Notes under the pieces: model-generated
Database searches by the model: none
Told to the model about the DNA's origin: nothing
Seen by the model: only the letters and a program-made list of their open reading frames with translations
Translations under genes and position numbers: made by a program
IMG/VR virus record: IMGVR_UViG_3300035212_003113
Coordinates: 1 to 64,000 of that record
Strand: one strand, 5' to 3'
Length of the DNA: 64,000 nt
Shown here: in pieces, positions 14,625 to 61,888 of the stretch
Layout: each line of letters starts with the position of its first letter
Position numbering within the stretch: position 1 is the stretch's first letter

Positions 14625-15332
14625 ATGAAGAAGACGCAAATTGCTCGTGAGCTTGTTGCCATTGCAAATGAACTTGATGCCGCCGGCAACACCGCAGCGG
14701 CCGATAAGGTTGATGCCGTTCTAGAGCAAACGGCGGCAGAGCCAGACGCTAAACAGCTTGTTGCCTCAGCTATCGAAGGCGCAGAAAAATCCGGTTATCT
14801 TGCGAATATTCTTGATCAGCGCAATCCATCTTCACCAAACCGACTCGGATCTTTCTTTGTAGAAGATCAAAGCGCCAGTAGCCTAAAGTCTGCCAACTGG
14901 AAGCCCTACTCGCACAAAGACATCATCCCTCCTGCAAAGGGCTACGTCGCAGATATTCCTGGCACAGTAGGAATGATAGGTCTCAACACGCTCCCGCCTG
15001 ACATGATTATTACTGCCTCAGATCCAAAGGGAACCCATGGCACTAAAGGTGGCGGCTACTCAGTGGAGGTTCCTCTGGACCCCTCTAAGTTGCCGCAGGC
15101 GTCACAGACCACCGCGATAATTGGGCCTGGTCAGAATAAAGAAGATCCTCTTGCTCTCTGGACGATTTTTCCCGGCACGCCTTTTGAGGGCGTTATTGTA
15201 GGCACTCACGAGCTGTCGCCCATCCAGGCAAAGAATCCCGAGAAGTTTGACACTAGCACCGGCTCGTTTCAGCTTACTGTACAGGAAGCACTCGATCAGG
15301 GATTCAAGTATGGCAAGGTTGCCCTAAAGTGA
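14625..15332 (+). CDS. leader-family protein (LDxxG...AD), putative virion cargo
   Basis: MKKTQIARELVAIANELDAAGNTAAADKVDAVL. Confidence 0.75.
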   Translation: MKKTQIARELVAIANELDAAGNTAAADKVDAVLEQTAAEPDAKQLVASAIEGAEKSGYLANILDQRNPSSPNRLGSFFVEDQSASSLKSANWKPYSHKDIIPPAKGYVADIPGTVGMIGLNTLPPDMIITASDPKGTHGTKGGGYSVEVPLDPSKLPQASQTTAIIGPGQNKEDPLALWTIFPGTPFEGVIVGTHELSPIQAKNPEKFDTSTGSFQLTVQEALDQGFKYGKVALK

Positions 15333-15495
15333 AACCATCAGCGGTTGAGTGTGGAATCCGCGCCTACGAAAAACACCACGGTTTATACCGGCACGAAAGA
15401 GTAGGCAGTTTGCCCGTCTGTAAAAAACGGGCAGCTTTTCTATCTGTTGTAAAGAAGGTTGTAGATCGGTAACGAGAAGTTGTAGAAATAGATAT

Positions 15496-15572
15496 GGGCA
15501 ATGGGACTGCTGAGGGTGGTCGCCTGATTTGCACTCAGGATATTCAGCTCGGTGCAAATCCGAGATTGTCCA
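15496..15572 (+). tRNA. tRNA-Ala(UGC)
   Basis: cloverleaf, CCTGA-TTTGCAC-TCAGG, G3:U70 and A73 alanine determinants; no encoded CCA. Confidence 0.85.
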
Positions 15573-15587
15573 CAAATATTGATTAGT

Positions 15588-15618
15588 AAAAAAGCCAGAG
15601 AAATCTGGCTTTTATTTT
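15588..15618. terminator. bidirectional terminator candidate
   Basis: AAAAGCCAGA-GAAA-TCTGGCTTTT with A/T tracts. Confidence 0.65.
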
Positions 15619-16136
15619 TACTTGCGTTTGCCGCCGTATCTTCCGGTACCCGTCAAGTAGTGATGTTCCTCGTGGCAATTAGGACAAAGTATTTGCAAGT
15701 TACTCACAGCGTTGTTTGATCTGTCGTGATCAATGTGATGAACATGCAAGACTTCTTTGTGCTCGCAGTATCCGCAGACCGCGCATTTATTGTCCTGCAC
15801 TCTGAATGCCACCTCTCTGTACGAAGAGGTCTGTCCGGTATAGTGCTCCGGCCATATCTCGCTGTGCCCGTTCTCCTGGCGCTTGAAAAGCCCTTGATGT
15901 TCTATTGAGCAAAAATAGAGGCCGGACTTGCTCGTCTTATGGGCTTTACGCAGTAGCGGAGTTTGGCACCAGGCACAGGCGCAAGATAGCAGCTTCTTTG
16001 GTTTGTTCTTGTTGCTATATACTGTGCCACAGGATTGGCAGCAGAACTTTGCCCGGCCACGCTTGACGTCTGCTTTTCTGGCAGAGAATACGCCGCCGCA
16101 GTTCAAACATACCTGGTCTACATTAGAGTTGTTCAT
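15618..16136 (-). CDS. HNH endonuclease with Cys-rich N-term
   Basis: HVHHIDHDRSNN...NLQILCPNCH; CxxC repeats. Confidence 0.85.
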   Translation of the reverse strand: MNNSNVDQVCLNCGGVFSARKADVKRGRAKFCCQSCGTVYSNKNKPKKLLSCACAWCQTPLLRKAHKTSKSGLYFCSIEHQGLFKRQENGHSEIWPEHYTGQTSSYREVAFRVQDNKCAVCGYCEHKEVLHVHHIDHDRSNNAVSNLQILCPNCHEEHHYLTGTGRYGGKRK

Positions 16137-16686: not shown

Positions 16687-16718
16687 AAAAAACCTTTTAC
16701 AAAACTTACACCCACCCA

Positions 16719-16816: not shown

Positions 16817-16843
16817 ACAGTGCCTCAACCAAGGAACTGAGCG

Positions 16844-18387: not shown

Positions 18388-18465
18388 CCGCTGTTAGCTA
18401 AATTGGTGACGGCAGCCCGCTCATAACGGGAAGATATGTAGGTTCGAGTCCTACACAGCGGACCA
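18388..18465 (+). tRNA. tRNA(CAU), probably Ile2
   Basis: cloverleaf, CTCATAA loop, encoded CCA, C4:G69 and C29:G41, directly upstream of tilS. Confidence 0.85.
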
Positions 18466-18468
18466 TTG

Positions 18469-18499
18469 CGCCCTCCCCGGCCAATAACCGGGGAGGGCT
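18469..18499 (+). other. GC-rich hairpin between tRNA and tilS
   Basis: GCCCTCCCCGG-CCAATAA-CCGGGGAGGGC. Confidence 0.55.
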
Positions 18500-18506
18500 A
18501 TTTACA

Positions 18507-19139
18507 ATGATTAAATTCAAGCTTAAAATTCCTTTAGATGTTACCGTCGCTTGCAGCGGAGGCGTTGACAGCATGGCGGTACTTCATTTTCTTTCACAAA
18601 GAAAAACCAGACCTAGGGTTGCCTACATGCACCACGGCACGGAGCACGGAGAGGAAGCTTACCAGTTTGTCAAGCAGTATTGCGCCGACAACAATCTAGA
18701 GCTGTCTGTTGGCAACTTGCTTAGGGACAGGCAGCGCGACGAGTCACCAGAAGAATTCTGGAGAATTCAACGCTATGCCTTTCTTCACGGTATCCCCGGA
18801 ACAGTTGTCATGGCGCATCATCTCGATGATAATATGGAATCATGGCTGCTCAGCGCACTGCATGGCAAGCCCTCCGTAATGCCGATCCGAAACAGGAACG
18901 TCATCCGGCCATTTATGATGACCAAGAAATCTGAATTAATGGATTGGTGCTGCCGCCATAGCGTGCCATATGTCCACGACAAGAGTAATGAAGATACTAA
19001 GTACGCCAGGAATAGAATTCGTAATAACATTATTCCAGAGGCACTTGCGGTAAACCCAGGATTGCACAAGGTAGTTGGCAAGCTCGTGGCGGCGCAATAT
19101 GCCAAAGAGGCCGAGAGCGGCAGTGTGCTGCCCGCGTAA
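18507..19139 (+). CDS. tilS: tRNA(Ile)-lysidine synthase, minimal catalytic form
   Basis: SGGVDS PP-loop, AHHLDD, DxSN...YxRNRIR. Confidence 0.85.
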   Translation: MIKFKLKIPLDVTVACSGGVDSMAVLHFLSQRKTRPRVAYMHHGTEHGEEAYQFVKQYCADNNLELSVGNLLRDRQRDESPEEFWRIQRYAFLHGIPGTVVMAHHLDDNMESWLLSALHGKPSVMPIRNRNVIRPFMMTKKSELMDWCCRHSVPYVHDKSNEDTKYARNRIRNNIIPEALAVNPGLHKVVGKLVAAQYAKEAESGSVLPA

Positions 19140-19502: not shown

Positions 19503-20234
19503 ATGAGCTATAAGAAGTTTGCGCAGGATCTATACGCGGTTGCCAGCCAGTTGGATGCGCTTGGAAAGCGTGGACTTGCAGACCGGGTTGACGGCATTGC
19601 AAATAAAATAATTTCCTCGGCAGCCCCAAGGGCAGTTAGTGATGAGCTGCGTCAACATCTAGTTGATAGTTTTCTGAAGTTATTTCCTAATGGCAGTGAC
19701 AAGCAGTTTTCTAAGTATCTGGAAGACATAGGCATGAAAAATTCGGGCCTTGGAGATACTCGGCCGGGCAGAATGGGTATTTCTATTCCCGAAGAAATAA
19801 AGATGTCAGAAATGCTGCAAGAGAAAAGACTTCGAGCAAAGATGAGCCCTTCGCCATCTATAGCAGGCGCTGTCTCTAAGGTGAAGCCATCTCCAGCCGG
19901 CATCGGCCATATGCCAAAGGGAAAAGCGGCTGCGATTATTGCAGCAGTAGGCGTAGCGGCTGCGGCCATAGCTGGTTACTTTATGCAGAGCTCCAATGAT
20001 AGCGAGCGTCTTGACACAGAGATGCAGGCACTCAAGGCAATGGTAGAAAGAGCGGCCGACAAGGATGATGCCGCTGTTAATCGCATCGCGGATTACGGGC
20101 TTTTGAAAGTAAAAGATATTCGCGGCAAGATAGGCAAAGAGCCTGGTTACGAAGCTGCGCCAGAGCAAATGCAGGCGCTAAGATCACTAGAAAAAGCACT
20201 TGTGGAGATCAAAGACGATATCGCCATGGACTGA
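19503..20234 (+). CDS. leader-family protein with one hydrophobic segment
   Basis: MSYKKFAQDLYAVASQLDALGKRGLADRVDGI. Confidence 0.75.
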   Translation: MSYKKFAQDLYAVASQLDALGKRGLADRVDGIANKIISSAAPRAVSDELRQHLVDSFLKLFPNGSDKQFSKYLEDIGMKNSGLGDTRPGRMGISIPEEIKMSEMLQEKRLRAKMSPSPSIAGAVSKVKPSPAGIGHMPKGKAAAIIAAVGVAAAAIAGYFMQSSNDSERLDTEMQALKAMVERAADKDDAAVNRIADYGLLKVKDIRGKIGKEPGYEAAPEQMQALRSLEKALVEIKDDIAMD

Positions 20235-20253: not shown

Positions 20254-20285
20254 AAAAAGAGAGGCGCGTTGCGCCTCTTTTATTT
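20254..20285. terminator. bidirectional terminator between convergent genes
   Basis: AAAAGAGAGGCGC-GTT-GCGCCTCTTTT. Confidence 0.7.
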
Positions 20286-21308
20286 CTTCCGTCTTAGTGT
20301 TCGTCCCATCTTTGCCGATCTCTGATCGAACAGGTCTTGCATTTCTTGGGGCAGGGCTCCTCGCACCGCGCCAATTGCATTCATCATATTGGCAACGCCA
20401 TCTAGCTCTTTTCGGTTCAGCTCCCCTGCGTATTCTTTTTCATACATATCGAGGCCCAGCTGAGCTTTGCTGAGGTTCCTGATTACATCATCAGCGTTTT
20501 GTGAATTCATGGCCGCCTCAAGCCATCCCCAAATCTGATCGGTAAGTGTCTCGTCATGCGTACCAATTGCCTTCTGGACCCAGCCGGCGCCGAAAGACCC
20601 GAGAGAGGGAAAGGCTTTGACTAGTAAGGTTCCGACTGCAACCCCTAGCGCCCCTGCTAGAGCAACGCCAGCGGCTCCTGCTGCGCCAGCACCGGCCAGA
20701 GTGCCTTTGGCTGCGGCAAGTCCAGCACCTGCCATCTCGGTGGCCTTGGCGCCTGCTGCCCAGCCGCCTATAGCCCCTGCTACGCCGCCAGTCTCTCCTC
20801 CCAATTCATAGCCGATCTGCTCGCCAACCATACTGCCCGCCAGCCCTCCGGCGGCGCCCGGTAATCGGCCAACAAGCCCTCTTGCCGTAGCTGCTCCCGG
20901 ACCTGACATCAGCCGCTTGGCTGCTTCTCCAGCAAGCATTTCCCCGCCAACTGCTCCCGCATTTCCTGCTAGGTTGGCATTCCATTCTTTCTCTGAGTGC
21001 GACGAGCCAGATTGATCGCCGACTATCCCTCCTGCTACTGCGCCTGCTATGCCACCAACTATGCCTGCGGCAGTTGGTATGCGCGTGCGTGCTTTGCTAG
21101 GATTTATAATTTTAGTACGGGTCTTGGCTCCACTGGCTCCCTTTGACCCAGCGCTCCATGTCCTTGTCTTTATCTTGGTCTCTTTTGCTACTGAGACGAG
21201 CACTTCTTCTAGGATTGCGTCGCAAGCGTCTGCCGCTTTTTCTAGACCTGCGGCATCTAAGTCTGCCGCTACGATGCGAATATCTTCCATTATTTTCTTA
21301 ATTGACAT
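20280..21308 (-). CDS. leader-family protein with glycine-zipper region
   Basis: MSIKKIMEDIRIVAADLDAAGLEKAADACDAI; GxxxG arrays. Confidence 0.75.
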   Translation of the reverse strand: MSIKKIMEDIRIVAADLDAAGLEKAADACDAILEEVLVSVAKETKIKTRTWSAGSKGASGAKTRTKIINPSKARTRIPTAAGIVGGIAGAVAGGIVGDQSGSSHSEKEWNANLAGNAGAVGGEMLAGEAAKRLMSGPGAATARGLVGRLPGAAGGLAGSMVGEQIGYELGGETGGVAGAIGGWAAGAKATEMAGAGLAAAKGTLAGAGAAGAAGVALAGALGVAVGTLLVKAFPSLGSFGAGWVQKAIGTHDETLTDQIWGWLEAAMNSQNADDVIRNLSKAQLGLDMYEKEYAGELNRKELDGVANMMNAIGAVRGALPQEMQDLFDQRSAKMGRTLRRKK

Positions 21309-22498: not shown

Positions 22499-23074
22499 AT
22501 GACCCAGGTGAGCTTTTCGTGCCGCATTTGCGGGGCTTTTGTATCAAGGCCTGATCGCAGTAGATCCGGCGGCTGTTGTTCGCCGAAGTGCTCTGCGCAT
22601 ATTCGTCATGCCGCTGCCGTAAGCCGCAATAGATTTGCCGCAATGTGCACAAGCCCAGATCCCGTAGACAGCAAGATAAATCTGGCTCCAGATTGCAGTG
22701 CCATTGATGCGCTACCAGTCCTGACCCAGGAAGATCTCTGGATCTTCCTGCTGCATATCGCAGCCACCTGCTGTACCGCTAGGCAGGCGGAGTGCATCCG
22801 GTTGCATTTTGGTTCTGGCTTGACCCAGAGGGAGATCGCCAATGAGATCGGTCTGAATCAGTCTACGGTTGCTCATTCGCTATATGGCATCAAGCTAACT
22901 TCCAATCGGGAGCAAGATGCAAAAAATCAAGGAAAGTATTATGGCGGCGCCATAAGGAGCATCAGGAAGCAGCTGCTTGATAAGTCAAAGCAAGAACAGC
23001 TACAGGCTTTGCTGACCCGCGCCGGTACGCTAGTAGAGCGCCCCGGCCCTAAAGCCGGGCCGCCCCGATCCTGA
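22499..23074 (+). CDS. Cys-rich N-term plus sigma-70 region 4-like HTH protein
   Basis: TARQAECIRLHFGSGLTQREIANEIGLNQSTV. Confidence 0.7.
   Translation: MTQVSFSCRICGAFVSRPDRSRSGGCCSPKCSAHIRHAAAVSRNRFAAMCTSPDPVDSKINLAPDCSAIDALPVLTQEDLWIFLLHIAATCCTARQAECIRLHFGSGLTQREIANEIGLNQSTVAHSLYGIKLTSNREQDAKNQGKYYGGAIRSIRKQLLDKSKQEQLQALLTRAGTLVERPGPKAGPPRS
23049..23074 (+). promoter_or_regulatory. motif copy 6
   Basis: CTAAA gccgggccgcccc GATCCTGA agga CGA. Confidence 0.65.
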
Positions 23075-24512: not shown

Positions 24513-24786
24513 CTTGAAAACAACCATTACCCACGGCAATCCTCAGCAGTTACAGGCCGTCATCCAGAAAGAATTTGGGGCCGATCTGCCTATCAAATTG
24601 CTGGAGGATTTCACCTGTAAGCCAGAAGCAGCAGTAGTGTTCCGCTGTAGCAACGGGCAGGTGACTGGCATTGTTCGCAGTCCAGGAGTGATTACTCGCG
24701 GGATCAGAGATGTGGCCAATAATATTAAAGCAATCTTTTACTGGCGAGAAGGCGGCAGCCTACAAGCAAAGATGCTGCAAGATTAA
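24502..24786 (+). CDS. family A-like paralog (divergent)
   Basis: MKLDL...KEFG; 11-nt overlap. Confidence 0.6.
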   Translation: MKLDLKTTITHGNPQQLQAVIQKEFGADLPIKLLEDFTCKPEAAVVFRCSNGQVTGIVRSPGVITRGIRDVANNIKAIFYWREGGSLQAKMLQD

Positions 24787-25058
24787 CGGGGTTTGTTGAC
24801 GTTGACTAGGCGTCGCAACTCTGATATCATTGCATACAGCTCAGCCGGGATAGTTATCTGCTTGGATATTATTATTTGCATGCCCGTATCAAAATGCTTC
24901 AGAGCCTCGCTGACTGCGGCCACCCAGTCGGGATGGCGCTGATCTGGGTTGCCGGCTGACTTAGTCAGGGATTCGATAATCGAATCAATCCGGTCGGCTG
25001 CTGCGTATTCGCCAGCTGCGTCTAGCTCGTTGGCCAGTGAAGAAAGTTTTTTAATCAT
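24783..25058 (-). CDS. leader-family protein (short)
   Basis: MIKKLSSLANELDAAGEYAAADRIDSII. Confidence 0.75.
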   Translation of the reverse strand: MIKKLSSLANELDAAGEYAAADRIDSIIESLTKSAGNPDQRHPDWVAAVSEALKHFDTGMQIIISKQITIPAELYAMISELRRLVNVNKPR

Positions 25059-25124: not shown

Positions 25125-25212
25125 GGGAAAATGGCCGAGTGGCTTAAGGCACCGGATTACTAACCCGGCGTACCGCAAGGTACCGTGAGTTCGACTCTCA
25201 CTTTTCCCGCCA
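25125..25212 (+). tRNA. tRNA-Ser with ACU anticodon
   Basis: GGGAAAA/TTTTCCC acceptor, TT-ACT-AA loop, long variable arm, G73, encoded CCA. Confidence 0.8.
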
Positions 25213-25285: not shown

Positions 25286-26689
25286 ATGAAGATTGCAAAA
25301 GACTTGTTAAAGATTGCGCATGAGCTGGACGAGAGCGGACTGTATGATCTGGCGGATAGCATAGATTCGCTGGCTGTTAAGCTGGCTTTTGATTTAAACG
25401 AGCAAAAAAAACAGCAGTTAGCTGATCTTGCTAAAAGAGATATGTCCCAGATAAAGCCGCCTCTGCCAAAAAATTTAGATATTGGTCCAGAGATCAAGGA
25501 CTTTCCGGCAGAGCAAGGCAGGCCCAGAACTCCTAGCGACTGGTCTGAATCGGCGCAGAAGGCGGAGAGAGAGATCCATAAAGAGAGGATGAAGCTCGAC
25601 AAGAAGCTGAGGGCAGAGTTTGATAAAGAGCTTCGTAAATCTCCTGGCTGGGAAAAGGCCAATGCAGCTCAACGCAAAGAAATTATCGAGGCCGCCAAAG
25701 CTCGCGTAAGAGGCGCAATGGCGAATCTCCAAGAGGGCGCCCGGTCCGTAGGAGAAGCAGCAGGCAAGGCAAAAGCCTACAGAGCTGACCCAAGCAACTC
25801 TTGGAAGACAGGTCTTAAGGGTGCTAAGCCCGGAATGGTATCTGGTCTTCTTGGCGGCGCAGTAGGCACTCACGCTGGCGCAACTATAGGCGAGGCTATA
25901 GGCGGAGATACAGGAAAGCTGGTAGGCGGGATTGTAGGCGGCGTAGCAGGCGCAACAGTCGCTGGAACGCCTGTGGGCAAAGCCCTCCTCGCAGGTTGGG
26001 TAATAGGTACCGCTATAAATGAAGCTGGGCTGGGAGACGCGATCCAGCAAGCTTTGTCAGCCAAAGAAGATGCTTCAGCTGAAGCTGGCCAGCTCAAAGA
26101 CATGATTGAGATATTTGACAAGACTGCCAAGATCATCGACCACCCTGCTACGCCTATGGAGACCAAGGTCAAAAAATACCTCAATATAGAGAATCTGATA
26201 AACAACATCATAAAGCATCCGGCTGCATTGCCCGTGCTAGGTCAAGACGGAGTAGAGAAGTTCAGAGGATTGAAGGCAAAAATGGACGCAGATGTAGCTG
26301 CCGCTGCCTCGTCTGCGCCGGCAGTAATGGAGATAACGACTGAAGAACTGGCTGCTGCCAAGGCACCTCGAAAAGTAGCACCTTCTCCTGCCATTCGTCA
26401 GCTTCAAGTCAACCTAAACAAGCTTAACGAAGCAGGCAAGACGCCTCTGCCCGCCAAGCTAGTAGAAGACGGTCTGGTTGGCAAGTATACTCGTGGAGCA
26501 ATAAGCGCCTTCGATCCCGCTAGCGGCGGTCGCGTAACCCGCGATCTACTCAAACGCGTATCAGATGCAGCTGCTAATGCTGGCAGTGTCGAAAGTGATG
26601 TCGCTCCCGATGCAGCACCACCGATGTCCGTAGCAGCACCATTCATACCAAACACTCCTATGATGCAAGGCAGGCAAGCAATGCCATGA
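25286..26689 (+). CDS. leader-family protein: glycine zipper plus putative peptidoglycan-binding domain
   Basis: MKIAKDLLKIAHELDESGLYDLADSIDSL; IRQLQxxLN...EDGLVGKYTRGAI. Confidence 0.75.
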   Translation: MKIAKDLLKIAHELDESGLYDLADSIDSLAVKLAFDLNEQKKQQLADLAKRDMSQIKPPLPKNLDIGPEIKDFPAEQGRPRTPSDWSESAQKAEREIHKERMKLDKKLRAEFDKELRKSPGWEKANAAQRKEIIEAAKARVRGAMANLQEGARSVGEAAGKAKAYRADPSNSWKTGLKGAKPGMVSGLLGGAVGTHAGATIGEAIGGDTGKLVGGIVGGVAGATVAGTPVGKALLAGWVIGTAINEAGLGDAIQQALSAKEDASAEAGQLKDMIEIFDKTAKIIDHPATPMETKVKKYLNIENLINNIIKHPAALPVLGQDGVEKFRGLKAKMDADVAAAASSAPAVMEITTEELAAAKAPRKVAPSPAIRQLQVNLNKLNEAGKTPLPAKLVEDGLVGKYTRGAISAFDPASGGRVTRDLLKRVSDAAANAGSVESDVAPDAAPPMSVAAPFIPNTPMMQGRQAMP

Positions 26690-35618: not shown

Positions 35619-35704
35619 GCCCTGATGGTGGAATGGTTTACACAGCAGATTTAAAATCTGTCGCTCGCAAGAGTTTGTCGGTTCGAGTCCGACTCGGGGC
35701 ACCA
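35619..35704 (+). tRNA. tRNA-Leu(UAA)
   Basis: GCAGA-TTTAAAA-TCTGT, long variable arm, encoded CCA. Confidence 0.9.
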
Positions 35705-35812
35705 ACAGCAGGCTGAATGCTATTATGTAGATTGATCGCCTACATAAAAAAGCCAGCGCGGCTCTAGGCAGTAGAGATGCGGGCTCCCCTCGCAACAACA
35801 TGGGGAGGTTGC

Positions 35813-35886
35813 TGGGGAATCGTCCAATGGCAGGACAACGGATTCTGATTCCGTTTATCTAGGTTCGAGTCCTAGTTCCCCAACCA
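35813..35886 (+). tRNA. tRNA-Gln(CUG)
   Basis: U1:A72, ACGGA-TTCTGAT-TCCGT, encoded CCA. Confidence 0.9.
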
Positions 35887-43939: not shown

Positions 43940-43962
43940 TCTAATTGGTACCAGGCATATAC

Positions 43963-43990
43963 TGAATACCGGTCAGGTCGCCGGTATTCA
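43963..43990 (+). other. intercistronic hairpin
   Basis: TGAATACCGG/CCGGTATTCA 10-bp stem. Confidence 0.55.
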
Positions 43991-44020
43991 GATTTACTAA
44001 ACCCTTAACCAAGGAAGATT

Positions 44021-45187: not shown

Positions 45188-45189
45188 AT

Positions 45190-45432
45190 ATGACTCTCTA
45201 TGGTATCATTCGTGAAATGCTCGCTCGTGGTGAACTGACAACAGCGCCAACCTACCATGCCCAAATGGGCAGCGGAGAGGCGCTTGTTTATAACGGCCAG
45301 CCCGTTCGGGTATTTACTGAAGTCAATACGCTGCGCGGCCTCGTGCCGCCTGAGAAGGTGATTGACTTTGATCGGCTTACTGATGTGCTCTGTGATCACG
45401 ACTTTAATGTGATTACGCACGCAGTCAGCTGA
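45190..45432 (+). CDS. hypothetical protein
   Basis: follows vWA gene, precedes terminator. Confidence 0.6.
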   Translation: MTLYGIIREMLARGELTTAPTYHAQMGSGEALVYNGQPVRVFTEVNTLRGLVPPEKVIDFDRLTDVLCDHDFNVITHAVS

Positions 45433-45439
45433 TCCTCGC

Positions 45440-45475
45440 GGGGAGGGCGGGTTGCTCCGCCCTCCCCTTTTTTAT
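45440..45475 (+). terminator. intrinsic terminator
   Basis: GGGAGGGCGG...CCGCCCTCCC then T run. Confidence 0.75.
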
Positions 45476-45488
45476 ATTAGGAGCCCGG

Positions 45489-45842
45489 ATGAAGCTATTA
45501 GATCAGGTTTTTAAAGTATATCCGCCAGCTGACTGGGCTGAACATTTGCCGCTACCGATGCCGCCATTATGGAGGGAAGCGACCGAAGACATTGCTACTG
45601 ACGAGATAGAAGTAGTCAACTGGAATTGCGGCTACCTGATGGTTGCCAAGTATTCGGCAGAAGATGCCGAGGAGCCATTTGTAAGCTACCGGGAGGCTAG
45701 CCCGCCTACGTCAGTAAGGATAACCTTTAAAGAGAATGTGCCCTGCGCTACTAAAAAGATTTTCAGCGAGAGCTTCTCTGGACGCACCATGCCTCACTCT
45801 TGTGGCTGCTGCATCACTCTATTTTACCCAGGAACAAAATGA
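45489..45842 (+). CDS. hypothetical protein (MKL start)
   Basis: AGGAG SD. Confidence 0.65.
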   Translation: MKLLDQVFKVYPPADWAEHLPLPMPPLWREATEDIATDEIEVVNWNCGYLMVAKYSAEDAEEPFVSYREASPPTSVRITFKENVPCATKKIFSESFSGRTMPHSCGCCITLFYPGTK

Positions 45843-46954
45843 AGATTTTTGAGAAGTCCAATAACGATCTCGGTTCTATTTATATCGTCTACGAGTCGCC
45901 TGTCAAGAACGAAGACCCACATCTGAAAGGTATGTCGCACCTGCTTGAGCACATGATCTGCTGCTCGCTGGACGATGTAGAGGAGCGGCTTGATCAGCAC
46001 TGCTTGACGTATAATGCTTATACCGGTGGTGATGAAGTAGTATTCTATCTGTCCGGCCTGAGCAGCGAGCTGGCCAAGTTCCGTGAGCTTTTCTTCGAGC
46101 GCATCCTGAGCTACCGTCCTACGCTGGAGCACTTCAACAAGGAAAAGAATATCGTCTTGCAGGAGTATGACGATGCCTATAGCGAGAGTGGCTTCTCCAG
46201 CTTTGCTAATTATTCAAGCGTTCGCTTTGGTTATGTAGGTCCGATTGGCGTTCGCTCTGCAATCGAGAGCGTAACGTTCGAGCAGATTTGTGATCTGCAT
46301 GCACGGGCTTTCTCGCGGCCATCAAAGGTTATCGTTGTAGACCAGAATGACGTAGATGTACAGACCGATTTTGCGGACACTAGCGCCTCGTCGTATACCG
46401 GTTATAAGCACGTTAATCACGAAGCACCAGTTGTGCCTAGCAGCATTAATGTTCTGAGCGCTTCGCCGCTACTGCCGTTGGACGGGGTATATCACCTGCA
46501 TATCGTTCAGTCTGTTCTGGGATACGGCCTTAAGAGCCCGCTTTATCAGGAGCTGCGCGAGAAGGCTTCGCTCTGTTATTGGGTATCTGCGGGTGGCTAT
46601 AAGATGAACGACGATCATATTATGGTCGTATCTACGTCTACGAAAGATACAAATGTGGCTCGCATCAAGGAATTGACACTGGACGTTCTCTCGAATCCCG
46701 AGCGCCATCTTACCCGTGATCGATTTGACATGATGATGCAGAATCGCCGCATCGCTAATAAGATTGCCGAGCAGAACCTTGCTGCTCATGCATACCGCAA
46801 GCATCTGAATTCGGCAAACGAGCGGGTGTCATTCCTGAAGAACATTGACAGGATTACTTATGAGTCTACGCTTGATTACTTCAACCGGAACCTGAATCCG
46901 CGCAACGTCGCATGGGAGCAGGTAGATGACCGAGATGTCCGTCAGATGAGCTGA
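45839..46954 (+). CDS. M16 family (insulinase-like) zinc peptidase
   Basis: HLLEH inverted motif, YNAYT, EKNIVLQE, LYQELREK..LCY. Confidence 0.85.
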   Translation: MKIFEKSNNDLGSIYIVYESPVKNEDPHLKGMSHLLEHMICCSLDDVEERLDQHCLTYNAYTGGDEVVFYLSGLSSELAKFRELFFERILSYRPTLEHFNKEKNIVLQEYDDAYSESGFSSFANYSSVRFGYVGPIGVRSAIESVTFEQICDLHARAFSRPSKVIVVDQNDVDVQTDFADTSASSYTGYKHVNHEAPVVPSSINVLSASPLLPLDGVYHLHIVQSVLGYGLKSPLYQELREKASLCYWVSAGGYKMNDDHIMVVSTSTKDTNVARIKELTLDVLSNPERHLTRDRFDMMMQNRRIANKIAEQNLAAHAYRKHLNSANERVSFLKNIDRITYESTLDYFNRNLNPRNVAWEQVDDRDVRQMS

Positions 46955-53009: not shown

Positions 53010-56000
53010 ATGACTATGATTTTTGATCCGGTAATGCTAGATCCCATGCCAGGAGACCGGTCTGGCGGACCTGCCTATGCCAGCGGCAGCATTGGCAATA
53101 TGCTGTATACTGCGGCTATGGCTGGTAGCGATGGCAACCTAATTGGCGTTACGCATAACCTAGCGCCCGCCACCTCTGCTGTAGCGGCCTCGCTAAGCAT
53201 TGACGGCATGACCTACCGCGCCCGCAACGCTGGAGTGGGCGGCAACTCTATAACGGTTCAACACAGCTCTGCGGCCATTGCAGCAATTGCAGCAGGCGCC
53301 ACCATAGGCGGCATCGCTTATACCGCAATAAGCTCTGGCGCTGCTGGTAATAATATATCAGTAACCGCATCGCTAGGCTCTGCTGCTGTTGCCGGCACCG
53401 CCACCCTAAATAGAAGCATTCCTTCTCTGGGAGTAGATTGGCCATTCACCATCACTGATAAGCCGGCTTACTATGGCGTACCAACAACTGTTCGCCTCAT
53501 GGGCAGCAGCATAGAGACGCCCTCTGCCGCTCTGCCTGCAACTGGCGTGAACGATCCGTATTTCGCAAATACTCCGATACTGGTTCGGGCCGGGTCAACG
53601 TCCACCGTAATTAACAACAATACCTTTCGCGATTCCAGCACCAATGCGCTGACAGTTTCTAGAACAGGAAACGTACAGCAGGGTACCTTCTCTCCGCATA
53701 CAAAGCCCGATGGATACTGGAGCACTTTCTTTAGCTCGAGTAGCGACTATATGTCGGTCACAGATAATGTGGCCTTCACGTTTACTGGCGACTTTACAAT
53801 TGAAGCCTGGATCAGTCCTACTGTTGCTGCATCTCAGTCGATAGTATCCCACTGGCAATCAGGCCTGGCCACCGGTTGCTCTTTTGCTCTTCATCTAACG
53901 GCAACGAATGCTCTTCGCTTTTCGTACGGGATTGGGCCGACTAACCTTGCCATTGAGAGCGCGGCCTCCGCAATAACCCTCAATCAGTGGAGCCATGTTG
54001 CGGTCTCACGCAGCGGAACATCTCTCATGATGTTCGTAAATGGTCAGCTAGTTAACAGCACCACGGCATCAGGGTCTCTTAACAATTGCCCTAACCCACT
54101 GTATATTGGAACCACAACAACCGATTTTTTTAGAGGATATATTTCGAACCTGCGCCTTGTCAAAGGCACTGCTGTCTACACTGGCGCCTTTAGTGTACCG
54201 ACGTCTCCTTTGACTGCTGTCTCAGGCACCTCGCTACTGACCTGCCAGAGCAACAACGTATTTGATCGATCAAGCAATGGATTTACGATTACGGCATCTT
54301 ATGCCAAGGTATTGCCAATCGGTCCTTTCGCTAGCCCAGAGTACACTGTCGCCACTAATGGCGCCAGCGCGTACTTTGATGGAGTTGGTGATCTGGCTGC
54401 CATATCAGATAACAATGCATTTACCCTATCTGGCAACTTCACAATTGAGGCATGGATCTACGCCGATCTATCAACGGGTGCGGCAGCAGAGCAGACTATT
54501 GCTGCTCATTGGCTAAGTGCTTCTGCGATTGCATCTTCGTTCATCCTTGCCACTACCTCTACAACGGGCGTTAAGTTCACGTACGCAGTCGGATCAACTA
54601 CTGCAACGCTAACTGGTGCTGCTGGCTCGCTGCGCTCAAGCGCATGGAACCATGTGGCAGTAACTCGCTCAAGCGGCAGCATACGCCTTTTTGCCAATGG
54701 CAGACAGGTTGCTTCCGGTTTTAGCGCATCGGCACTTAACAATAGCACAAGCAACCTGACCCTTGGCTACAGGACCTCGACAGAGACCTTTTATCTAAAA
54801 GGCTACGTGAGCGATTTCCGTGTGATAAATGGCTCTGCTGCTTATACTGCTGCCTTCGCTGTGCCGACAGCTCCTCTTACTGTTGCTCCCTCGACTGCTC
54901 TGCTGCTTAGCTTTGCAAACGCAGAGATACAGAATCTGGGCGGTTTATCAAATATTGAAACAGCTGGTAGCACAATTTCGTGGTCTATTGGTAATAAGTA
55001 CAACTCAAAGAGCGTCTACTTTGACGGCGTTGGAGATTACCTATCGATTGGCCCCGTAAACAATCCGCACCTTGCGATTGGCACGGCAGACTTTACAATT
55101 GAGGCGTGGATTTATAGAACTGCTGGTGGCAGCGGATTCCCGGCCCTATATGCTAACTATGGCGGATCCCGTAGCGGTGCCCACCTACTTAGAATAATAG
55201 GACCCACAAATAAAGCCGCATTCTATGTCTACCCGTCGACTGATGTCGTAACCTCTACCTCAGACATTGCCCTAAATACATGGACGCATATTGCTGTCTC
55301 AAGGTCTGGCTCTAACACGTACCTATATGTCAATGGTGTACTTGAGGCTTCTTCGACTACAGCTTATACTCTGACGTCAGACCCATTGCACCCAGCAACC
55401 TCTGGTGGCTACTGGCAATCAGCTGCCATAGAGCCTAATGGTTACTTCACAGGGCGTATTGAAGACTTGCGAGTGACGGTCGGTGTCGCGCGATACGAGG
55501 GTGCTACCTCTGTTACGCGTGAGCTTAGCGGCAGCACAGAAATTGTTCGCTTCCCAAATAATACAAGCGTCAACCAGATTCTAGCAGTAGTTGGAGATGG
55601 CGGCACCAATGTATCATCGCGGGTAAGCATTAGTGCTACGCCAAGCACAGCGACTCTATCGTTCACTGATCCTGCATCAAACCCAGGAGCAACGACATCT
55701 GGCGGATCTTCTGCGGCTCCTCTGTCAGTGGCAGTCACCGGCAGCGACATAAGCATAACTCTGTCGGCATCAGGTTCGACGTCAGCCGAGGTTTGCACTC
55801 TGCTGACAAATACTGCTAGCACTGCTGCTCTTGTCTCTGCTACTCCCTCTGTCGAGTCAGCAAGCGCTGCTGCTAAGACATTCCTGTCTGGTGGCGTCAA
55901 CGCAAGTGCAGGAGTCCTCGCAGCCTCGGCAAGTGGCGACGCAGTATCCATATCCGTACCGGTCGGCACAACAAATGTTGAACTCAAATCCTTCCTAGAG

Positions 56001-56300
56001 GGCGTAGAGAGCATTGCTGGTGCCAGCGGCATCATAGACCTTGTCGATCCAGCTGGTAGCGCTCCAGTATCAAGCGGACCTCTTGGTCTAGCTGGAGGCG
56101 CAGACCAGGTGCCAGGAGTTCTAGGAATTGCTGTAGTAGGAAATGCAGTATCTGTATCGGTTCCTGCCGGCACAGTTTCGGCAGACCTGGTAACGGCACT
56201 TAATGCGAACGCGCCATTTGCTGCGCTGGCGGTTGCTTCGGCATCGGATGCAGATCCGGTCGAAACAACTGGTACGGTTACGCTATCTGGCGGCCAGTGA
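53010..56300 (+). CDS. large Ala/Ser/Thr-rich protein with three LamG (ConA-like) domains, putative virion appendage
   Basis: three xFTIEAW...WxHxAVxRSxG modules; GGAGG SD. Confidence 0.8.
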   Translation: MTMIFDPVMLDPMPGDRSGGPAYASGSIGNMLYTAAMAGSDGNLIGVTHNLAPATSAVAASLSIDGMTYRARNAGVGGNSITVQHSSAAIAAIAAGATIGGIAYTAISSGAAGNNISVTASLGSAAVAGTATLNRSIPSLGVDWPFTITDKPAYYGVPTTVRLMGSSIETPSAALPATGVNDPYFANTPILVRAGSTSTVINNNTFRDSSTNALTVSRTGNVQQGTFSPHTKPDGYWSTFFSSSSDYMSVTDNVAFTFTGDFTIEAWISPTVAASQSIVSHWQSGLATGCSFALHLTATNALRFSYGIGPTNLAIESAASAITLNQWSHVAVSRSGTSLMMFVNGQLVNSTTASGSLNNCPNPLYIGTTTTDFFRGYISNLRLVKGTAVYTGAFSVPTSPLTAVSGTSLLTCQSNNVFDRSSNGFTITASYAKVLPIGPFASPEYTVATNGASAYFDGVGDLAAISDNNAFTLSGNFTIEAWIYADLSTGAAAEQTIAAHWLSASAIASSFILATTSTTGVKFTYAVGSTTATLTGAAGSLRSSAWNHVAVTRSSGSIRLFANGRQVASGFSASALNNSTSNLTLGYRTSTETFYLKGYVSDFRVINGSAAYTAAFAVPTAPLTVAPSTALLLSFANAEIQNLGGLSNIETAGSTISWSIGNKYNSKSVYFDGVGDYLSIGPVNNPHLAIGTADFTIEAWIYRTAGGSGFPALYANYGGSRSGAHLLRIIGPTNKAAFYVYPSTDVVTSTSDIALNTWTHIAVSRSGSNTYLYVNGVLEASSTTAYTLTSDPLHPATSGGYWQSAAIEPNGYFTGRIEDLRVTVGVARYEGATSVTRELSGSTEIVRFPNNTSVNQILAVVGDGGTNVSSRVSISATPSTATLSFTDPASNPGATTSGGSSAAPLSVAVTGSDISITLSASGSTSAEVCTLLTNTASTAALVSATPSVESASAAAKTFLSGGVNASAGVLAASASGDAVSISVPVGTTNVELKSFLEGVESIAGASGIIDLVDPAGSAPVSSGPLGLAGGADQVPGVLGIAVVGNAVSVSVPAGTVSADLVTALNANAPFAALAVASASDADPVETTGTVTLSGGQ

Positions 56301-59549: not shown

Positions 59550-59927
59550 ATGGGACTTGATCAAAATGCTTATTACTGCAAGCCGCAAAGCATCGGGACA
59601 GCAGTCGTAGACTTCGGGCAGCCCGAGGATGCAAAAGATTTCTTTTACTGGCGCAAGCACCCAAACCTTCAGGGTTGGATGCGTCGGCTTTATGAAGCCA
59701 AGGGCGGCAAAGAGGAATTCAATTGCGTTCCTGTCCTGCTGACTGAGGCCGATCTTTCTGAGCTTGAACTGGATATCTTACGCGGCGCTCTGCCGCATAC
59801 CAATGGTTTCTTTTTTGGTTCATCCCGCAACGACGAAGACGAACAAGAGCGGGATCTTCAATTCATTCGACAGGCGCGTGAGCTGATCGTAAATGGCAGC
59901 GCTGTTTTTTATTCTTCTTGGTGGTGA
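59550..59927 (+). CDS. conserved phage hypothetical protein
   Basis: MGLDQ...YWRKHPNLQGWM...FFFG...YSSWW. Confidence 0.8.
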   Translation: MGLDQNAYYCKPQSIGTAVVDFGQPEDAKDFFYWRKHPNLQGWMRRLYEAKGGKEEFNCVPVLLTEADLSELELDILRGALPHTNGFFFGSSRNDEDEQERDLQFIRQARELIVNGSAVFYSSWW

Positions 59928-60082
59928 TATGATTCGTAGCATTTTTATTATCTGTATTCTTTCTGTTGCCTGTGGTCAAGTGCAGGAGCCAGCTCCTCGG
60001 CAGAGCCCAATCCCCGAAGTAAAGGTGATCGAGTCAGAGGTGGTTATCACCTACCTTTCGTCAAAATGAAACCGGAGGCCGT

Positions 60083-60739
60083 GTGAAGATATTTCATATT
60101 TCTGATACGCACGGCTCAGGCTTCTGGGATACGCCGCTAGGAGCAGACATCGATGTTGTTGTTCATAGCGGCGATGCCTTTCCTAACTCTACTCGTGGTC
60201 ATGTTGCAACCGAGCAGGTATATCAGTCCGGCTGGCTTAAACAGTTTGTAGAACCAATACGGACATGGTTGAATGGTCGCCCATTCATTTATGTACCGGG
60301 TAATCATGACTATATCGAGTTTGCAGACTTCCTACCTGCGCACCGAATTGATACAGACCCTATTCATGTGGCAGGCAAGTCCTGGCGAGGATTTCGCCAG
60401 ATACCATGGATTCGCGGGGAGTGGGCGGGTGAAATACATGCGCCAGACATGCAGGATATAATCGAAAGCATCTTCGACTGCGATAGTTCACTCTCTGCCC
60501 CAGAGGGCGACGTACTGGTGTGTCACTCTCCACCCGCCGGTGTATTTGATGCCAGCCCTAATGGCCTTTTCCATTACGGTATCAGCGCACTGAGCAATGC
60601 CCTTCAATATAGGAACCACGCTTTCAAGGCTGTGCTTTTCGGTCACGTACACCAGGAAAAGTACTGCCAGATGCGAAGGATGGGTATTATATTTAGCAAT
60701 GCCGCAGACAATCCTGGCGGCACCGTGGAGCTGCCTTGA
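60083..60739 (+). CDS. calcineurin-like metallophosphoesterase
   Basis: SDTH, SGD, GNHD, HSPP, GHVH. Confidence 0.85.
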   Translation: MKIFHISDTHGSGFWDTPLGADIDVVVHSGDAFPNSTRGHVATEQVYQSGWLKQFVEPIRTWLNGRPFIYVPGNHDYIEFADFLPAHRIDTDPIHVAGKSWRGFRQIPWIRGEWAGEIHAPDMQDIIESIFDCDSSLSAPEGDVLVCHSPPAGVFDASPNGLFHYGISALSNALQYRNHAFKAVLFGHVHQEKYCQMRRMGIIFSNAADNPGGTVELP

Positions 60740-61293
60740 AGCTTTCTGCTGCCGCTGCCCTAGTTGGAATTCCTGATGACTTCAGGCCAGCTAAGATAGG
60801 AGATCCATATAATTATCGTACCAAGATATTTGTACGCAATCGAGAATACATAAGAATCTTCTTACTGCAAGACGGCTCACTTTATTCAAAAGAATATGGC
60901 TACATGGCCAAGACTGATGGCGGGCGACTGACCCCAGACAGCTCTGTATCCAGAGGGCCGGCTATCCTAGTGTACTATCAGGATGGCTCCCCTTCTTCGC
61001 AGGCGTGGGCACGCGAGGGCGAGATTCATCGTGACAGCAGCAATGGTCCAGCACTGGTAAAGTATCACAAAGATGGAGATATGTATTCTGCTGAGTATCG
61101 GAATGGCGGGCGACTGCATCGTCCAAGGAAGCGAGGACCGGCTCTTTATTATGAGCGCGGCAGCGGTGATATTTACTTTGGCTTTTGGGAGGATGGCATC
61201 TGCATTGCAGAGTTCGAAGGGCCAATCCTAAAAGATTATGATCAGCCATTAGAGTTTTTTGAATCTAGTTATAAGAAAGTGCGGAGAAGTTAA
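60736..61293 (+). CDS. family D: MKL start plus divergent HRxxGPA repeats
   Basis: HRDSSNGPA, HRPRKRGPA. Confidence 0.7.
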   Translation: MKLSAAAALVGIPDDFRPAKIGDPYNYRTKIFVRNREYIRIFLLQDGSLYSKEYGYMAKTDGGRLTPDSSVSRGPAILVYYQDGSPSSQAWAREGEIHRDSSNGPALVKYHKDGDMYSAEYRNGGRLHRPRKRGPALYYERGSGDIYFGFWEDGICIAEFEGPILKDYDQPLEFFESSYKKVRRS

Positions 61294-61526
61294 TGAAGAA
61301 CGATATCCTTGGAATTGCACTACTTGCTGCTACGGCAGTTAACATTGCTATGTTTTTTGCCATCGCTGTTCCAGCGCTCGGTCTAGACGATGACGAAGAG
61401 AAGCCTGATCCGCCTGTGCCAGAGTTCAATTACACTGAGTCCCAGGTCCATTTTCTGCGGCGTGTGACAGATCCGGTAGAGACCGGCGGTTTGCAATGCT
61501 CCCGTTCTTATGCCTGTGAACCTTGA
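61293..61526 (+). CDS. small membrane-anchored protein
   Basis: N-terminal hydrophobic helix. Confidence 0.55.
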   Translation: MKNDILGIALLAATAVNIAMFFAIAVPALGLDDDEEKPDPPVPEFNYTESQVHFLRRVTDPVETGGLQCSRSYACEP

Positions 61527-61888
61527 TCGGGTTTTTCCGCAACTGCGCGCACCCAGACCTTTTCCGGCATCTCTGCGATGTTAGGCTCGTAGTATTCTTC
61601 TTCCTGATCAAACCGGATCTCATATCCGGTTGCAGTACCCATTTCTGCGCGTAGCTTGGCCTTGGCCTGCTCTTTGGCAACCGTAACTCCGCGATCTACA
61701 TCGCTGCCTTGGATATCTGCATAGCCTACTGCTGCCACCTCGCCCGCTTTTAATCCTGCGTTTGGGCTGGCAATCCAGTCTGGCTTGTCCTGAGCCAGGC
61801 GCATAATAACGCCATCCAAGGCACTGGCGGCTTCAGTATGGCCGCGCTCGTCCAGAAAGTTTGCGATTTTTATCAGGTCTTTTAGCAT
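61508..61888 (-). CDS. leader-family protein
   Basis: MLKDLIKIANFLDERGHTEAASALDGVI. Confidence 0.75.
   Translation of the reverse strand: MLKDLIKIANFLDERGHTEAASALDGVIMRLAQDKPDWIASPNAGLKAGEVAAVGYADIQGSDVDRGVTVAKEQAKAKLRAEMGTATGYEIRFDQEEEYYEPNIAEMPEKVWVRAVAEKPDQGSQA

What the first reader, a model, noticed from the sequence alone, without database searches (positions are those of the whole stretch)
14625..61888. Six unrelated proteins share a ~35-aa N-terminal leader: candidate capsid-targeting tag
14625(+), 19503(+), 20280(-), 24783(-), 25286(+) and 61508(-) begin with K..(L/I)..(I/L/V)A..LD..G....A(D/S).(I/V/L/C)D.(I/V/L). The leader is followed by a short motif ending in Ala (QTA, SSA, SVA, KSA, KLA, RLA), after which the sequences are unrelated (91-467 aa). 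They are stand-alone genes on either strand, and several end at terminator hairpins. By analogy to the T4 capsid-targeting sequence and prohead-protease processing of internal proteins, this could be a portable packaging signal cleaved after Ala.
Basis: partly seen in the sequence, partly recalled or inferred. Interest (0 to 1): 0.72.

Follow-up and report, generated by a model that had tools for sequence, protein, structure and literature searches.

The report
Portable helical-hairpin tag of huge phages
Fifteen otherwise unrelated proteins of an uncultivated 372-kb phage carry the same ~35-residue two-helix module; it is an unannotated mini-domain found in over 1,400 protein clusters of large phages and also ends the scaffold-position head gene, so it is most likely a portable docking tag (possibly for loading proteins into the capsid) rather than a simple cleaved leader.

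Summary
The six window proteins share a ~35-aa module (invariant A, D, G, A, D). Shuffled and reversed genomes give no comparable hit. The 371,675-bp genome (IMG/VR contig with terminal repeats; head protein 45% identical to Bacillus phage G) holds 15 copies: nine N-terminal, three C-terminal, three internal. A profile search of 1.84 billion protein representatives finds 1,472 clusters, all metagenomic, often with 2-3 copies per protein. Some ORFs are only the module. No Pfam, PHROG or PDB entry covers it.

The module is predicted as a helix-turn-helix hairpin joined to its passenger by a variable acidic linker.

The new link to the capsid is circumstantial. The small acidic protein encoded directly after the head-maturation protease ends in this module. 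In 44 of 55 related loci the ORF at that position ends in one or two (once four) divergent copies.

I favour a scaffold-type docking tag that co-assembles cargo into the procapsid (confidence ~0.4). A capsid-unrelated docking or oligomerisation hairpin is the main rival. "Cleaved after Ala" is unsupported. Binding could not be tested here.

The parts
14625..15332 (+). 235-aa protein. N-terminal module at aa 3-42 (14634-14747), a variable acidic linker, then a conserved passenger domain of unknown function.
   Evidence: Orthologs down to 47% identity all keep the module, and the linker varies in length. No Pfam or PHROG family and no homolog in cultured phages.
19503..20234 (+). 243-aa protein. 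N-terminal module (19509-19625) and one TM-like segment at aa 139-163.
   Evidence: Only weak sub-threshold 2TM-effector Pfam hits.
20280..21308 (-). 342-aa Gly-rich protein (16% Gly). N-terminal module (21183-21302) and two hydrophobic, Gly-zipper-like segments.
   Evidence: No homolog in cultured phages.
24783..25058 (-). 91-aa protein whose first 37 aa are the module (24948-25058). Predicted as four helices, with the first two forming the module hairpin.
   Evidence: AlphaFold2 model has pLDDT 79.6 with helices H2-14 and H18-35. In orthologs the module is nearly invariant while the rest is about 40% identical.
25286..26689 (+). 467-aa protein. N-terminal module (25286-25402) and a Gly-zipper region resembling stretches of tape-measure and tail-lysin proteins.
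   Evidence: No homolog in cultured phages.
61508..61888 (-). 126-aa acidic protein. N-terminal module (61778-61888). Shares a short 'PDW(I/V)A' stretch with the 24783(-) protein just after the module.
20257..20281 (.). Bidirectional terminator-like hairpin (11-bp stem with T-runs on both strands) between the convergent module genes 19503(+) and 20280(-).

Best explanation
The shared element is an autonomous ~35-residue helix-turn-helix hairpin. Helix 1 ends at the conserved 'LD..G' turn, and helix 2 carries 'A(D/S)..D' and ends at the conserved 'hA'. It is tethered to its passenger by a flexible acidic linker and works as a portable docking module. The same module forms the C-terminal domain of the small acidic protein encoded directly after the head-maturation protease, which is the position and composition of a scaffolding or core protein. 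I therefore infer that the module is the element by which that protein docks in the assembling procapsid, either on the coat lattice or on the scaffold core. Unrelated proteins carrying a copy would then be co-assembled into the head by mimicking the scaffold, and later be available for ejection with the DNA. Shown: the family, its copy number, its positional flexibility, its predicted fold, its distribution, and the synteny with protease, portal and major head protein. Inferred: that the syntenic protein is a scaffold or core protein, what the module binds, that tagged proteins enter the capsid, and whether the tag is later removed.
For: (1) The module family is real. There are 15 copies in the genome with invariant A, D, G, A, D, and 1,472 representative clusters at E<=1e-3 among 1.84 billion proteins. 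(2) It behaves as an independent domain. It is found at N-terminal, internal and C-terminal positions, with 2-3 copies in 101 of the 150 best hits and some ORFs consisting only of the module. The homologous passenger at G0 210.6 kb and G001 132.9 kb has the module N-proximal in one phage and C-terminal in the other. The linker between module and passenger varies in length. The predicted hairpin is H2-14/H18-35. (3) Head context. TerL is at 216.2 kb, the portal at 218.2 kb and the major head protein at 238.6 kb. The 1,269-aa protein at 223882-227691 has an N-terminal head-maturation-protease domain: phrog_18299 at E=7e-15, with tblastn matches to phage G gp19 and Tunturi_5 gp331. The next gene (227972-228178, 68 aa, 10 acidic versus 3 basic residues) ends in a canonical module scoring 47.5 bits. 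(4) In 44 of 55 related IMG/VR loci the ORF between the protease gene and the conserved 235-aa anchor ends in module(s). These proteins have a conserved N-terminal helix, a strongly acidic linker, and two C-terminal repeats. The repeats align to the module end to end by hhalign (probability 73%, E=3e-5). The AlphaFold2 model has a disordered linker and a C-terminal domain at pLDDT 92-97. In cultured relatives the gene after the protease is likewise a highly acidic, scaffold-like protein. (5) Four of the 15 copies lie in the 35-kb head-morphogenesis block (binomial p=0.046), including a protein with an HExxH metallopeptidase motif three genes after the portal. Related loci also have extra copies in head-region genes. 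(6) Genomes whose scaffold-position protein carries modules all have dispersed copies (11 of 11). Four of the five whose protein lacks them have 0-1. (7) Passenger types fit internal or ejected virion proteins: TM and Gly-zipper segments, LysM and PG_binding domains, a lipase, a transglycosylase, a metallopeptidase, and DUF5661/DUF5872 domains. That phages package effectors in the head for injection is established (PMC5512222). A helix-turn-helix at the end of a scaffolding protein that binds the coat N-arm is the P22 paradigm (PMC12005531).
Against: There is no direct evidence of binding or of presence in virions. The only complex prediction that could be run (two window proteins) returned 'no answer', and the coat protein could not be submitted. 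The scaffold identity of the syntenic protein rests on position, composition and predicted architecture only; there is no PHROG, Pfam, PDB or Foldseek support. The co-occurrence amounts to about two independent contrasts on a tree, and one of them (G000 versus G013) is not supportive. Most tagged genes, including all six in the window, lie outside the structural block, on both strands, and share no detectable upstream motif with each other. The module is acidic in this genome (mean net charge -3.3), unlike the basic P22 hairpin. Cultured relatives with the same head genes (phage G, Tunturi_5) lack the module entirely, so it is not needed for this type of capsid.
Confidence: 0.42

Rival explanations
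1. The module is a generic protein-protein docking or oligomerisation hairpin with no special link to the capsid. It pairs with other copies (homo- or heterotypically) or with an unknown hub, building multi-protein assemblies or a sticker-and-spacer network in the infected cell. Its presence in a head-region gene would be just one of many uses.
For: A two-helix hairpin usually needs a partner to be stable. Proteins with 2-3 copies, and ORFs made only of one or two modules, are common. Most tagged genes lie outside structural blocks. Surface residues vary, while the invariant residues look structural: a capping Asp, the turn Gly, and small Ala at the helix-helix contact. The capsid link is only circumstantial.
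Against: In the confident model of the double-module domain the two hairpins share one long helix rather than packing into a four-helix bundle. The heterodimer prediction gave no signal, although that is not evidence against binding. This reading does not explain the conserved position at the end of the gene after the protease in 44 of 55 loci, nor the envelope-directed passenger domains.
Confidence: 0.28
2. One reading: a strictly N-terminal, T4-CTS-like leader that is removed by the prohead protease after the Ala that ends the motif.
For: There is a strong N-terminal preference among single-copy proteins: 42 N-terminal, 5 internal, 1 C-terminal. A head-maturation protease exists. Ala at that position is conserved.
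Against: C-terminal and internal copies and multi-copy proteins exist. The Ala lies within predicted helix 2, which spans H18-35 in the 91-aa protein. No conserved residue pattern follows it. C-terminal copies end 3-6 residues after the same Ala, where cleavage would serve no purpose. The known giant-phage and T4 prohead proteases cut after Glu (own knowledge; PMC5694885 and PMC10052503 surfaced in the literature search on SPN3US but were not read for this point).
Confidence: 0.08
3. The module directs proteins to another destination or partner: the cell envelope, a host factor, or a phage-encoded processing or chaperone system such as the MoxR AAA+ / VWA-metallopeptidase / M16-peptidase triad encoded in the window.
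For: M16 peptidases remove N-terminal presequences in other systems (own knowledge). The triad is present twice in this genome and once in G001. Several passengers are membrane- or peptidoglycan-directed.
Against: The triad does not track the module. Phage G has weak homologs but no module, and G002 has 20 modules but no triad in the 67% assembled. The module is acidic and amphipathic but not hydrophobic enough for a membrane anchor, and it has no signal-peptide features.
Confidence: 0.1
4. The module has no partner. It is a neutral, easily duplicated helical cap or solubility element that spreads by recombination among phage genes.
For: The module is very short, highly mobile and variable in copy number (0-20 per genome) even among close relatives.
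Against: There is strong purifying selection: five invariant positions across 15 paralogs, and near-invariance of the module in orthologs whose passenger is only about 40% identical. Orthologs down to 47% identity retain it.
Confidence: 0.07

Closest known systems
Phage T4 capsid-targeting sequence (CTS) of the internal proteins IPI-III and Alt
   Same: A portable tag found on several unrelated proteins of one phage. It is mostly N-terminal, and it is thought to route proteins into the scaffold core of the prohead so that they are injected with the DNA.
   Different: The T4 CTS is ~10 residues, unstructured, strictly N-terminal, and removed by gp21 at (L/I)-x-E (own knowledge). The module here is a folded 35-aa hairpin that also occurs C-terminally, internally and in tandem. 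It has no conserved cleavage motif. No T4-type protease or Gp23 family hit was found, but those searches had no working control.
[quoted passage not shown]
   Same: A small helix-turn-helix at the C-terminal end of a protein encoded in the scaffold position. In P22 this hairpin alone is sufficient to carry fused foreign proteins into procapsids (PMC9962691, PMC12005531). The mechanism proposed here is the natural equivalent.
   Different: There is no sequence similarity. The P22 hairpin is basic (Arg293, Lys296) and binds an acidic coat N-arm (PMC12005531), whereas this module is acidic in this genome (mean -3.3). P22 does not naturally spread its hairpin to other genes. Binding to coat is untested here.
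Encapsulin cargo-loading peptides
   Same: Short conserved tags at either terminus of unrelated cargo proteins that dock on the inside of an HK97-fold shell. Ferritin-like/Dps cargo also appears among module-bearing proteins.
   Different: Encapsulin tags are ~10-20 residue extended peptides with a Gly/Ser-rich consensus (own knowledge), not a helical hairpin. There is no sequence relation, and the shell here is a true phage capsid.
MuF / SPP1 gp7 head-targeting domain and 'polyvalent proteins' of phages (Iyer et al. 2017, PMC5512222)
   Same: A shared module that is believed to bring diverse effector domains into the phage head. Two tagged proteins here carry DUF5661 and (weakly) DUF5872 domains; that these are typical of such multi-domain phage proteins is my own recollection, not checked in the paper.
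   Different: MuF is a ~100-300-aa portal-associated domain fused into long multi-domain polypeptides. Here a 35-aa module tags many separate small genes, and no MuF domain was seen.
Propeptides of inner-body and ejection proteins of phiKZ-like and SPN3US giant phages
   Same: Many head-internal proteins of giant phages carry N-terminal regions, and a prohead protease is present.
   Different: Those propeptides have no common fold and are defined by cleavage after Glu in (S/A/G)-x-E (own knowledge; PMC5694885 and PMC10052503 surfaced in the search but were not read for this point). This phage belongs to the phage-G-like lineage by its head protein, and no such motif follows the module.

Membership tests
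T4-type capsid-targeting sequence | Short (~10 aa), strictly N-terminal peptide | tested here: not met
   The module is ~35 aa and is predicted as two helices. In the genome 3 of 15 copies are C-terminal and 3 are internal. Among 266 copies in the best 150 representatives, 111 are N-terminal, 121 internal and 34 C-terminal.
T4-type capsid-targeting sequence | Followed by a conserved prohead-protease site ((L/I)-x-E) and removed on maturation | tested here: not met
   Position-by-position counts after the module show a conserved 'hA' and then a variable E/D/P/G-rich linker, with no fixed Glu. Orthologs of 14625(+) have linkers of different length and sequence. Actual processing is not testable here.
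T4-type capsid-targeting sequence | Tagged proteins are present in proheads and virions | not testable with these tools
   The phage is uncultivated, and no module-bearing cultured phage was found.
Scaffolding-protein coat-binding helix-turn-helix (P22 type) | Helix-turn-helix of 30-40 aa at the C-terminus of the protein | tested here: met
   The 68-aa protein at 227972-228178 ends in the module. In 44 of 55 related loci the syntenic ORF ends in module(s). The C-terminal domain is modelled at pLDDT 92-97 as helical hairpins.
Scaffolding-protein coat-binding helix-turn-helix (P22 type) | The carrier is the scaffolding protein (gene between protease or portal and the major head protein; acidic, helical, partly disordered) | tested here: inconclusive
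   Position directly after the head-maturation protease, acidic composition and a disordered linker all fit. No homology to any annotated scaffolding protein was found.
Scaffolding-protein coat-binding helix-turn-helix (P22 type) | Basic face that binds an acidic coat N-arm | tested here: not met
   Modules of this genome have a mean net charge of -3.3, and the scaffold-type repeats about 0. The P22 contacts are Arg293 and Lys296 (PMC12005531).
Scaffolding-protein coat-binding helix-turn-helix (P22 type) | Physical binding to the coat protein | not tested
   The complex-prediction tool did not accept the head protein. The job that ran (two window proteins) gave 'no answer'.
Encapsulin cargo-loading peptide | Conserved short extended peptide with a Gly/Ser-rich consensus at a cargo terminus | tested here: not met
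   The module consensus is helical (h..hA..LD..G....AD..D..h..hA) and about 35 aa long.
Pfam DUF7273 / any curated family | Score above the family's gathering threshold | tested here: not met
   The best hit is 14.1 bits against a cut-off of 31, for one protein only. None of the 150 representatives hits a Pfam or PHROG family over the module. There is no PDB sequence relative.
WXG100 / LXG type VII secretion hairpins | Helical hairpin with a W-x-G or L-x-G turn, recognised by the family profiles | tested here: not met
   Only one of the 150 representatives gives a weak T7SS_signal hit (E=8e-4). The turn motif here is LD..G.

The most novel reading that the evidence does not exclude
A clade of uncultivated huge phages has a natural, modular cargo-loading system. 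A 35-residue helical hairpin derived from, or shared with, the scaffold-position head protein has been copied onto 5-20 unrelated genes per genome. A whole arsenal of effectors (membrane-active, cell-wall-binding, proteolytic and unknown) would thus be built into the procapsid and injected with the DNA. The tag would be a transferable, genetically encodable capsid address.
Probability: 0.35. Interest if true: 0.85.

Novelty: new variant of a known kind. Interest (0 to 1): 0.68.

Why it matters
How giant phages select the dozens of proteins they pack into the head is largely unknown outside T4. A recognisable address tag would allow the injected proteome of uncultivated huge phages to be predicted from sequence alone. 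That would point to candidate early-acting effectors and anti-defence proteins among genes that are otherwise unannotated. It would also give a compact natural tag for loading proteins into phage-derived capsids. Even if the capsid link fails, this is an unannotated, strongly conserved mini-domain present in more than 1,400 protein clusters, and it deserves a family definition.

Tried and rejected
- **Cultured relatives.** No DNA match of the region to cultured phages. tblastn of a two-module protein and of three window proteins against cultured phages gave nothing.
- **T4-type families.** Searches of the genome for the T4-type protease and Gp23 families were negative, but no control rang, so they are uninformative.
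- **Complex prediction.** I did not send them by another route.
- **Fold searches.** Searches of the scaffold-position model against PDB and BFVD gave only generic helical-repeat matches at E>0.1. Profile searches against PDB sequences also gave nothing. ESM Atlas look-alikes are unnamed viral clusters.
- **Shared promoter.** No enriched k-mer was found upstream of the 15 tagged genes.
- **MoxR/VWA/M16 triad as a 'leader peptidase' system.** It does not co-vary with the module.
- **Conserved 235-aa neighbour as a receptor candidate.** It is present in clade members with and without modules, so it is not informative.
- **Named sources.** All 20 clusters looked up are metagenomic hypotheticals. 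One is labelled as a Patescibacteria MAG, but its context looks phage-like.
- **Co-occurrence statistic.** Fisher p=0.013 is discounted because the tree shows only about two independent contrasts.

Full report
**What the window is.** The window is the first 64 kb of a single 371,675-bp contig (GC 51%). IMG/VR classes it as a virus with direct terminal repeats and 100% completeness. The contig encodes a large terminase (216.2 kb), a portal (218.2 kb) and a major head protein (238.6 kb). The head protein is 45% identical to gp27 of Bacillus phage G and 35% to that of Tunturiibacter phage Tunturi_5. This is therefore an uncultivated huge phage of the phage-G-like head lineage. There is no DNA match to cultured phages.

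**Check of the observation.** The six ORFs exist as described, with lengths 235, 243, 342, 91, 467 and 126 aa.
- A strict regular expression for the motif hits the six-frame translation of the window exactly six times, each at an ORF start.
- An HMM built from the six leaders also finds six further copies at E<1e-3 in the rest of the genome. The best hit is E=3.0 in the reversed genome and E=1.2 in a codon-shuffled genome.
- After iteration and alignment there are 15 copies with five invariant positions (A14, D18, G21, A26, D30 in the numbering of the first protein).
- With the module masked, the passengers compared are unrelated to one another (best E=0.035, a Gly-rich stretch).
- A strong bidirectional terminator hairpin lies between the convergent genes 19503(+) and 20280(-).

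**Anatomy.**
- Nine copies are N-terminal: the six in the window plus 64865, 77052 and 100746.
- Three are C-terminal: 207334-207444(-), 228056-228172(+) and 336071-336178(-).
- Three are internal or N-proximal: 210722-210835, 222130-222240 and 266753-266869.
- The 91-aa window protein is modelled (pLDDT 79.6) with helices at residues 2-14 and 18-35, and the break is at the conserved LD..G turn.
It is Ala in 63 of 101 N-terminal copies from other genomes. What follows is an E/D/P/G-rich stretch without a fixed residue.
- Orthologs of the 235-aa window protein down to 47% identity all keep the module, but the linker before the conserved passenger domain differs in length and sequence.
- In orthologs of the 91-aa protein the module is nearly invariant while the rest is about 40% identical.
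- In this genome the module is acidic, with a mean net charge of -3.3. That argues against a DNA-binding helix-turn-helix.

**Distribution.** A profile of the 15 copies, scored against 1.84 billion cluster representatives, finds 1,472 proteins at E<=1e-3.
- Among the best 150, 101 have two or three copies. Single-copy proteins have it N-terminal in 42 of 48 cases.
- Some predicted proteins consist only of one or two modules, at 35, 38 and 67 aa.
- No Pfam or PHROG family covers the module. The passengers carry scattered domains: LysM, lipase, ferritin/Dps, zinc ribbons, RCC1, AP2 and DUF5661. No PDB sequence is related.
- All 20 clusters looked up are metagenomic. The contexts seen are large phage-like contigs.
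- Four other IMG/VR contigs of 67-232 kb hold 8-20 copies each, often in tight gene clusters.
- Phage G and Tunturi_5 have none. The same search recovers 15 of 15 copies in the window's own genome and divergent copies elsewhere, so this negative result is meaningful.

**The link to the head.**
- The 1,269-aa protein at 223882-227691 begins with a head-maturation-protease domain: phrog_18299 at E=7e-15, with tblastn matches to phage G gp19 and to the annotated protease of Tunturi_5.
- The next gene (227972-228178) encodes a 68-aa acidic, helical protein whose last 39 residues are a canonical module. A conserved, beta-rich 235-aa protein follows it.
- Using that neighbour as an anchor I fetched 58 related loci. 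In 44 of the 55 usable ones the ORF between the protease gene and the anchor ends in module(s).
- In the wider clade that ORF is 150-350 aa long. It has a conserved N-terminal helix, a very acidic linker, and two C-terminal repeats of the same pattern (one version has four, plus a peptidoglycan-binding insert).
- The repeats align to the module end to end and in register by profile-profile comparison (probability 73%, E=3e-5).
- The AlphaFold2 model of one such protein has a disordered linker and a C-terminal helical domain at pLDDT 92-97. In that domain two hairpins share a long central helix.
- In phage G and Tunturi_5 the gene after the protease is also a strongly acidic protein, as scaffolding proteins usually are, but it has no module.
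- Four of the 15 copies lie within the 35-kb head block (p=0.046). One of them is in a protein with an HExxH motif three genes after the portal.
- One passenger family has the module N-proximal in this phage and C-terminal in the related contig G001.

**Co-occurrence, and its limits.** Among 16 clade genomes, all 11 whose scaffold-position protein carries modules also have dispersed copies (1-15). Of the five without, four have 0-1 and one has 5. A naive Fisher test gives p=0.013. On a tree of the anchor protein, however, the labels need only two changes, and one of the two contrasts is not supportive. I count this as weak support.

**Mechanism.** The best-supported reading is a portable docking hairpin.
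- A helix-turn-helix at the end of a scaffolding protein that binds the coat N-arm is established for P22 (PMC12005531), and that hairpin alone carries fused proteins into P22 procapsids (PMC9962691).
- Packaging of effectors into the head for injection is established for T4 and others (PMC5512222).
- If the protein after the protease is a scaffold or core component, then copies of its docking element on other proteins would co-assemble them into the procapsid.
- The passengers fit what internal or ejected proteins look like: TM and Gly-zipper segments in three window proteins, peptidoglycan-binding and lytic domains, and a metallopeptidase.

The steps from 'shared module' to 'binds the procapsid' and 'is packaged' are inferences. 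The complex prediction that would have addressed them could not be run with the head protein. The job that did run gave no answer.

**Rivals.**
- A capsid-independent docking or oligomerisation hairpin remains plausible. Points in its favour are the multi-copy and module-only proteins, the location of most tagged genes outside structural blocks, and the absence of a shared upstream motif.
- The specific 'leader cleaved after Ala' version is unlikely, for the reasons given under anatomy.
- A link to the MoxR/VWA/M16 triad in the window was considered and is not supported by phyletic patterns.

**Novelty and verdict.** The kind of system is known: a portable address tag for capsid loading, or a scaffold-type docking hairpin. 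This module, its fold-level form, its dispersal to up to 20 genes per genome and its restriction to uncultivated large phages appear undescribed. No curated family, no solved structure and no paper was found with the searches made. I rate it a new variant of a known kind.

Noticed in passing
window 18388-19139: A tRNA with anticodon CAT (18388-18465) lies immediately upstream of a PP-loop ATPase gene (18507-19139; PF01171, E=5e-33). This could be a phage-encoded tRNA-Ile2 plus lysidine synthetase (TilS-like) pair. The gene has a homolog in G001.
   Followed up: no
window 42776-46954 (second set at about 96.2-98.9 kb of the genome): A triad of a MoxR-type AAA+ ATPase, a VWA/DUF2201 metallopeptidase-like protein and an M16-family peptidase. 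It is duplicated in the genome and conserved in G001. It does not co-vary with the module.
   Followed up: partly
window 53010-56300: A 1,096-aa protein with three Laminin_G_3 (concanavalin-like lectin) domains (E=2e-58), lying far from the structural gene block.
   Followed up: no
window 22499-23074 and genome 205986-206378: Two small proteins with sigma-70 region-4-like domains, both matching the same G001 protein. The second lies at the start of the head-gene block, so these are candidate phage sigma or late-transcription factors.
   Followed up: no
window 12482-12551, 25125-25212, 35619-35886: Four further tRNA genes (Thr-TGT, Ser-ACT, Leu-TAA, Gln-CTG). The tRNA-Ser lies between the divergent module genes 24783(-) and 25286(+).
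   Followed up: no
genome 223882-227691 (outside the window): The head-maturation protease domain (about 280 aa) is fused to a C-terminal extension of about 1,000 aa in this phage and throughout the related clade. In phage G and Tunturi_5 the protease is a stand-alone protein of about 290 aa.
   Followed up: partly
G001 36857-36991; P0151 on a 318-kb contig: Some ORFs encode only the module (35-44 aa). One lies 50 nt upstream of a PG_binding + GDSL-lipase gene on the same strand. These may be genuine stand-alone modules, or tags split from their passenger by a stop, frameshift or recoding event.
   Followed up: no
L087:1277-2314: One variant of the scaffold-position protein has four modules and an inserted peptidoglycan-binding (endolysin-like) repeat. 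That is unexpected for a pure scaffold and hints that this protein may itself be ejected into the envelope.
   Followed up: no
genome 265859-267142 and 336062-336649 (outside the window): Two module proteins of note. The 265859 protein combines the module with a DUF5661 domain and a weak, sub-threshold DUF5872 match. The 336062 protein has an N-terminal 'IDFKPP...' domain (phrog_2859). From my own recollection these domains occur in multi-domain 'polyvalent' phage proteins.
   Followed up: partly
window 24783-25058(-) and 61508-61888(-): These two small module proteins share a short 'PDW(V/I)A' stretch right after the module. They may be distant paralogs rather than fully unrelated.
   Followed up: no
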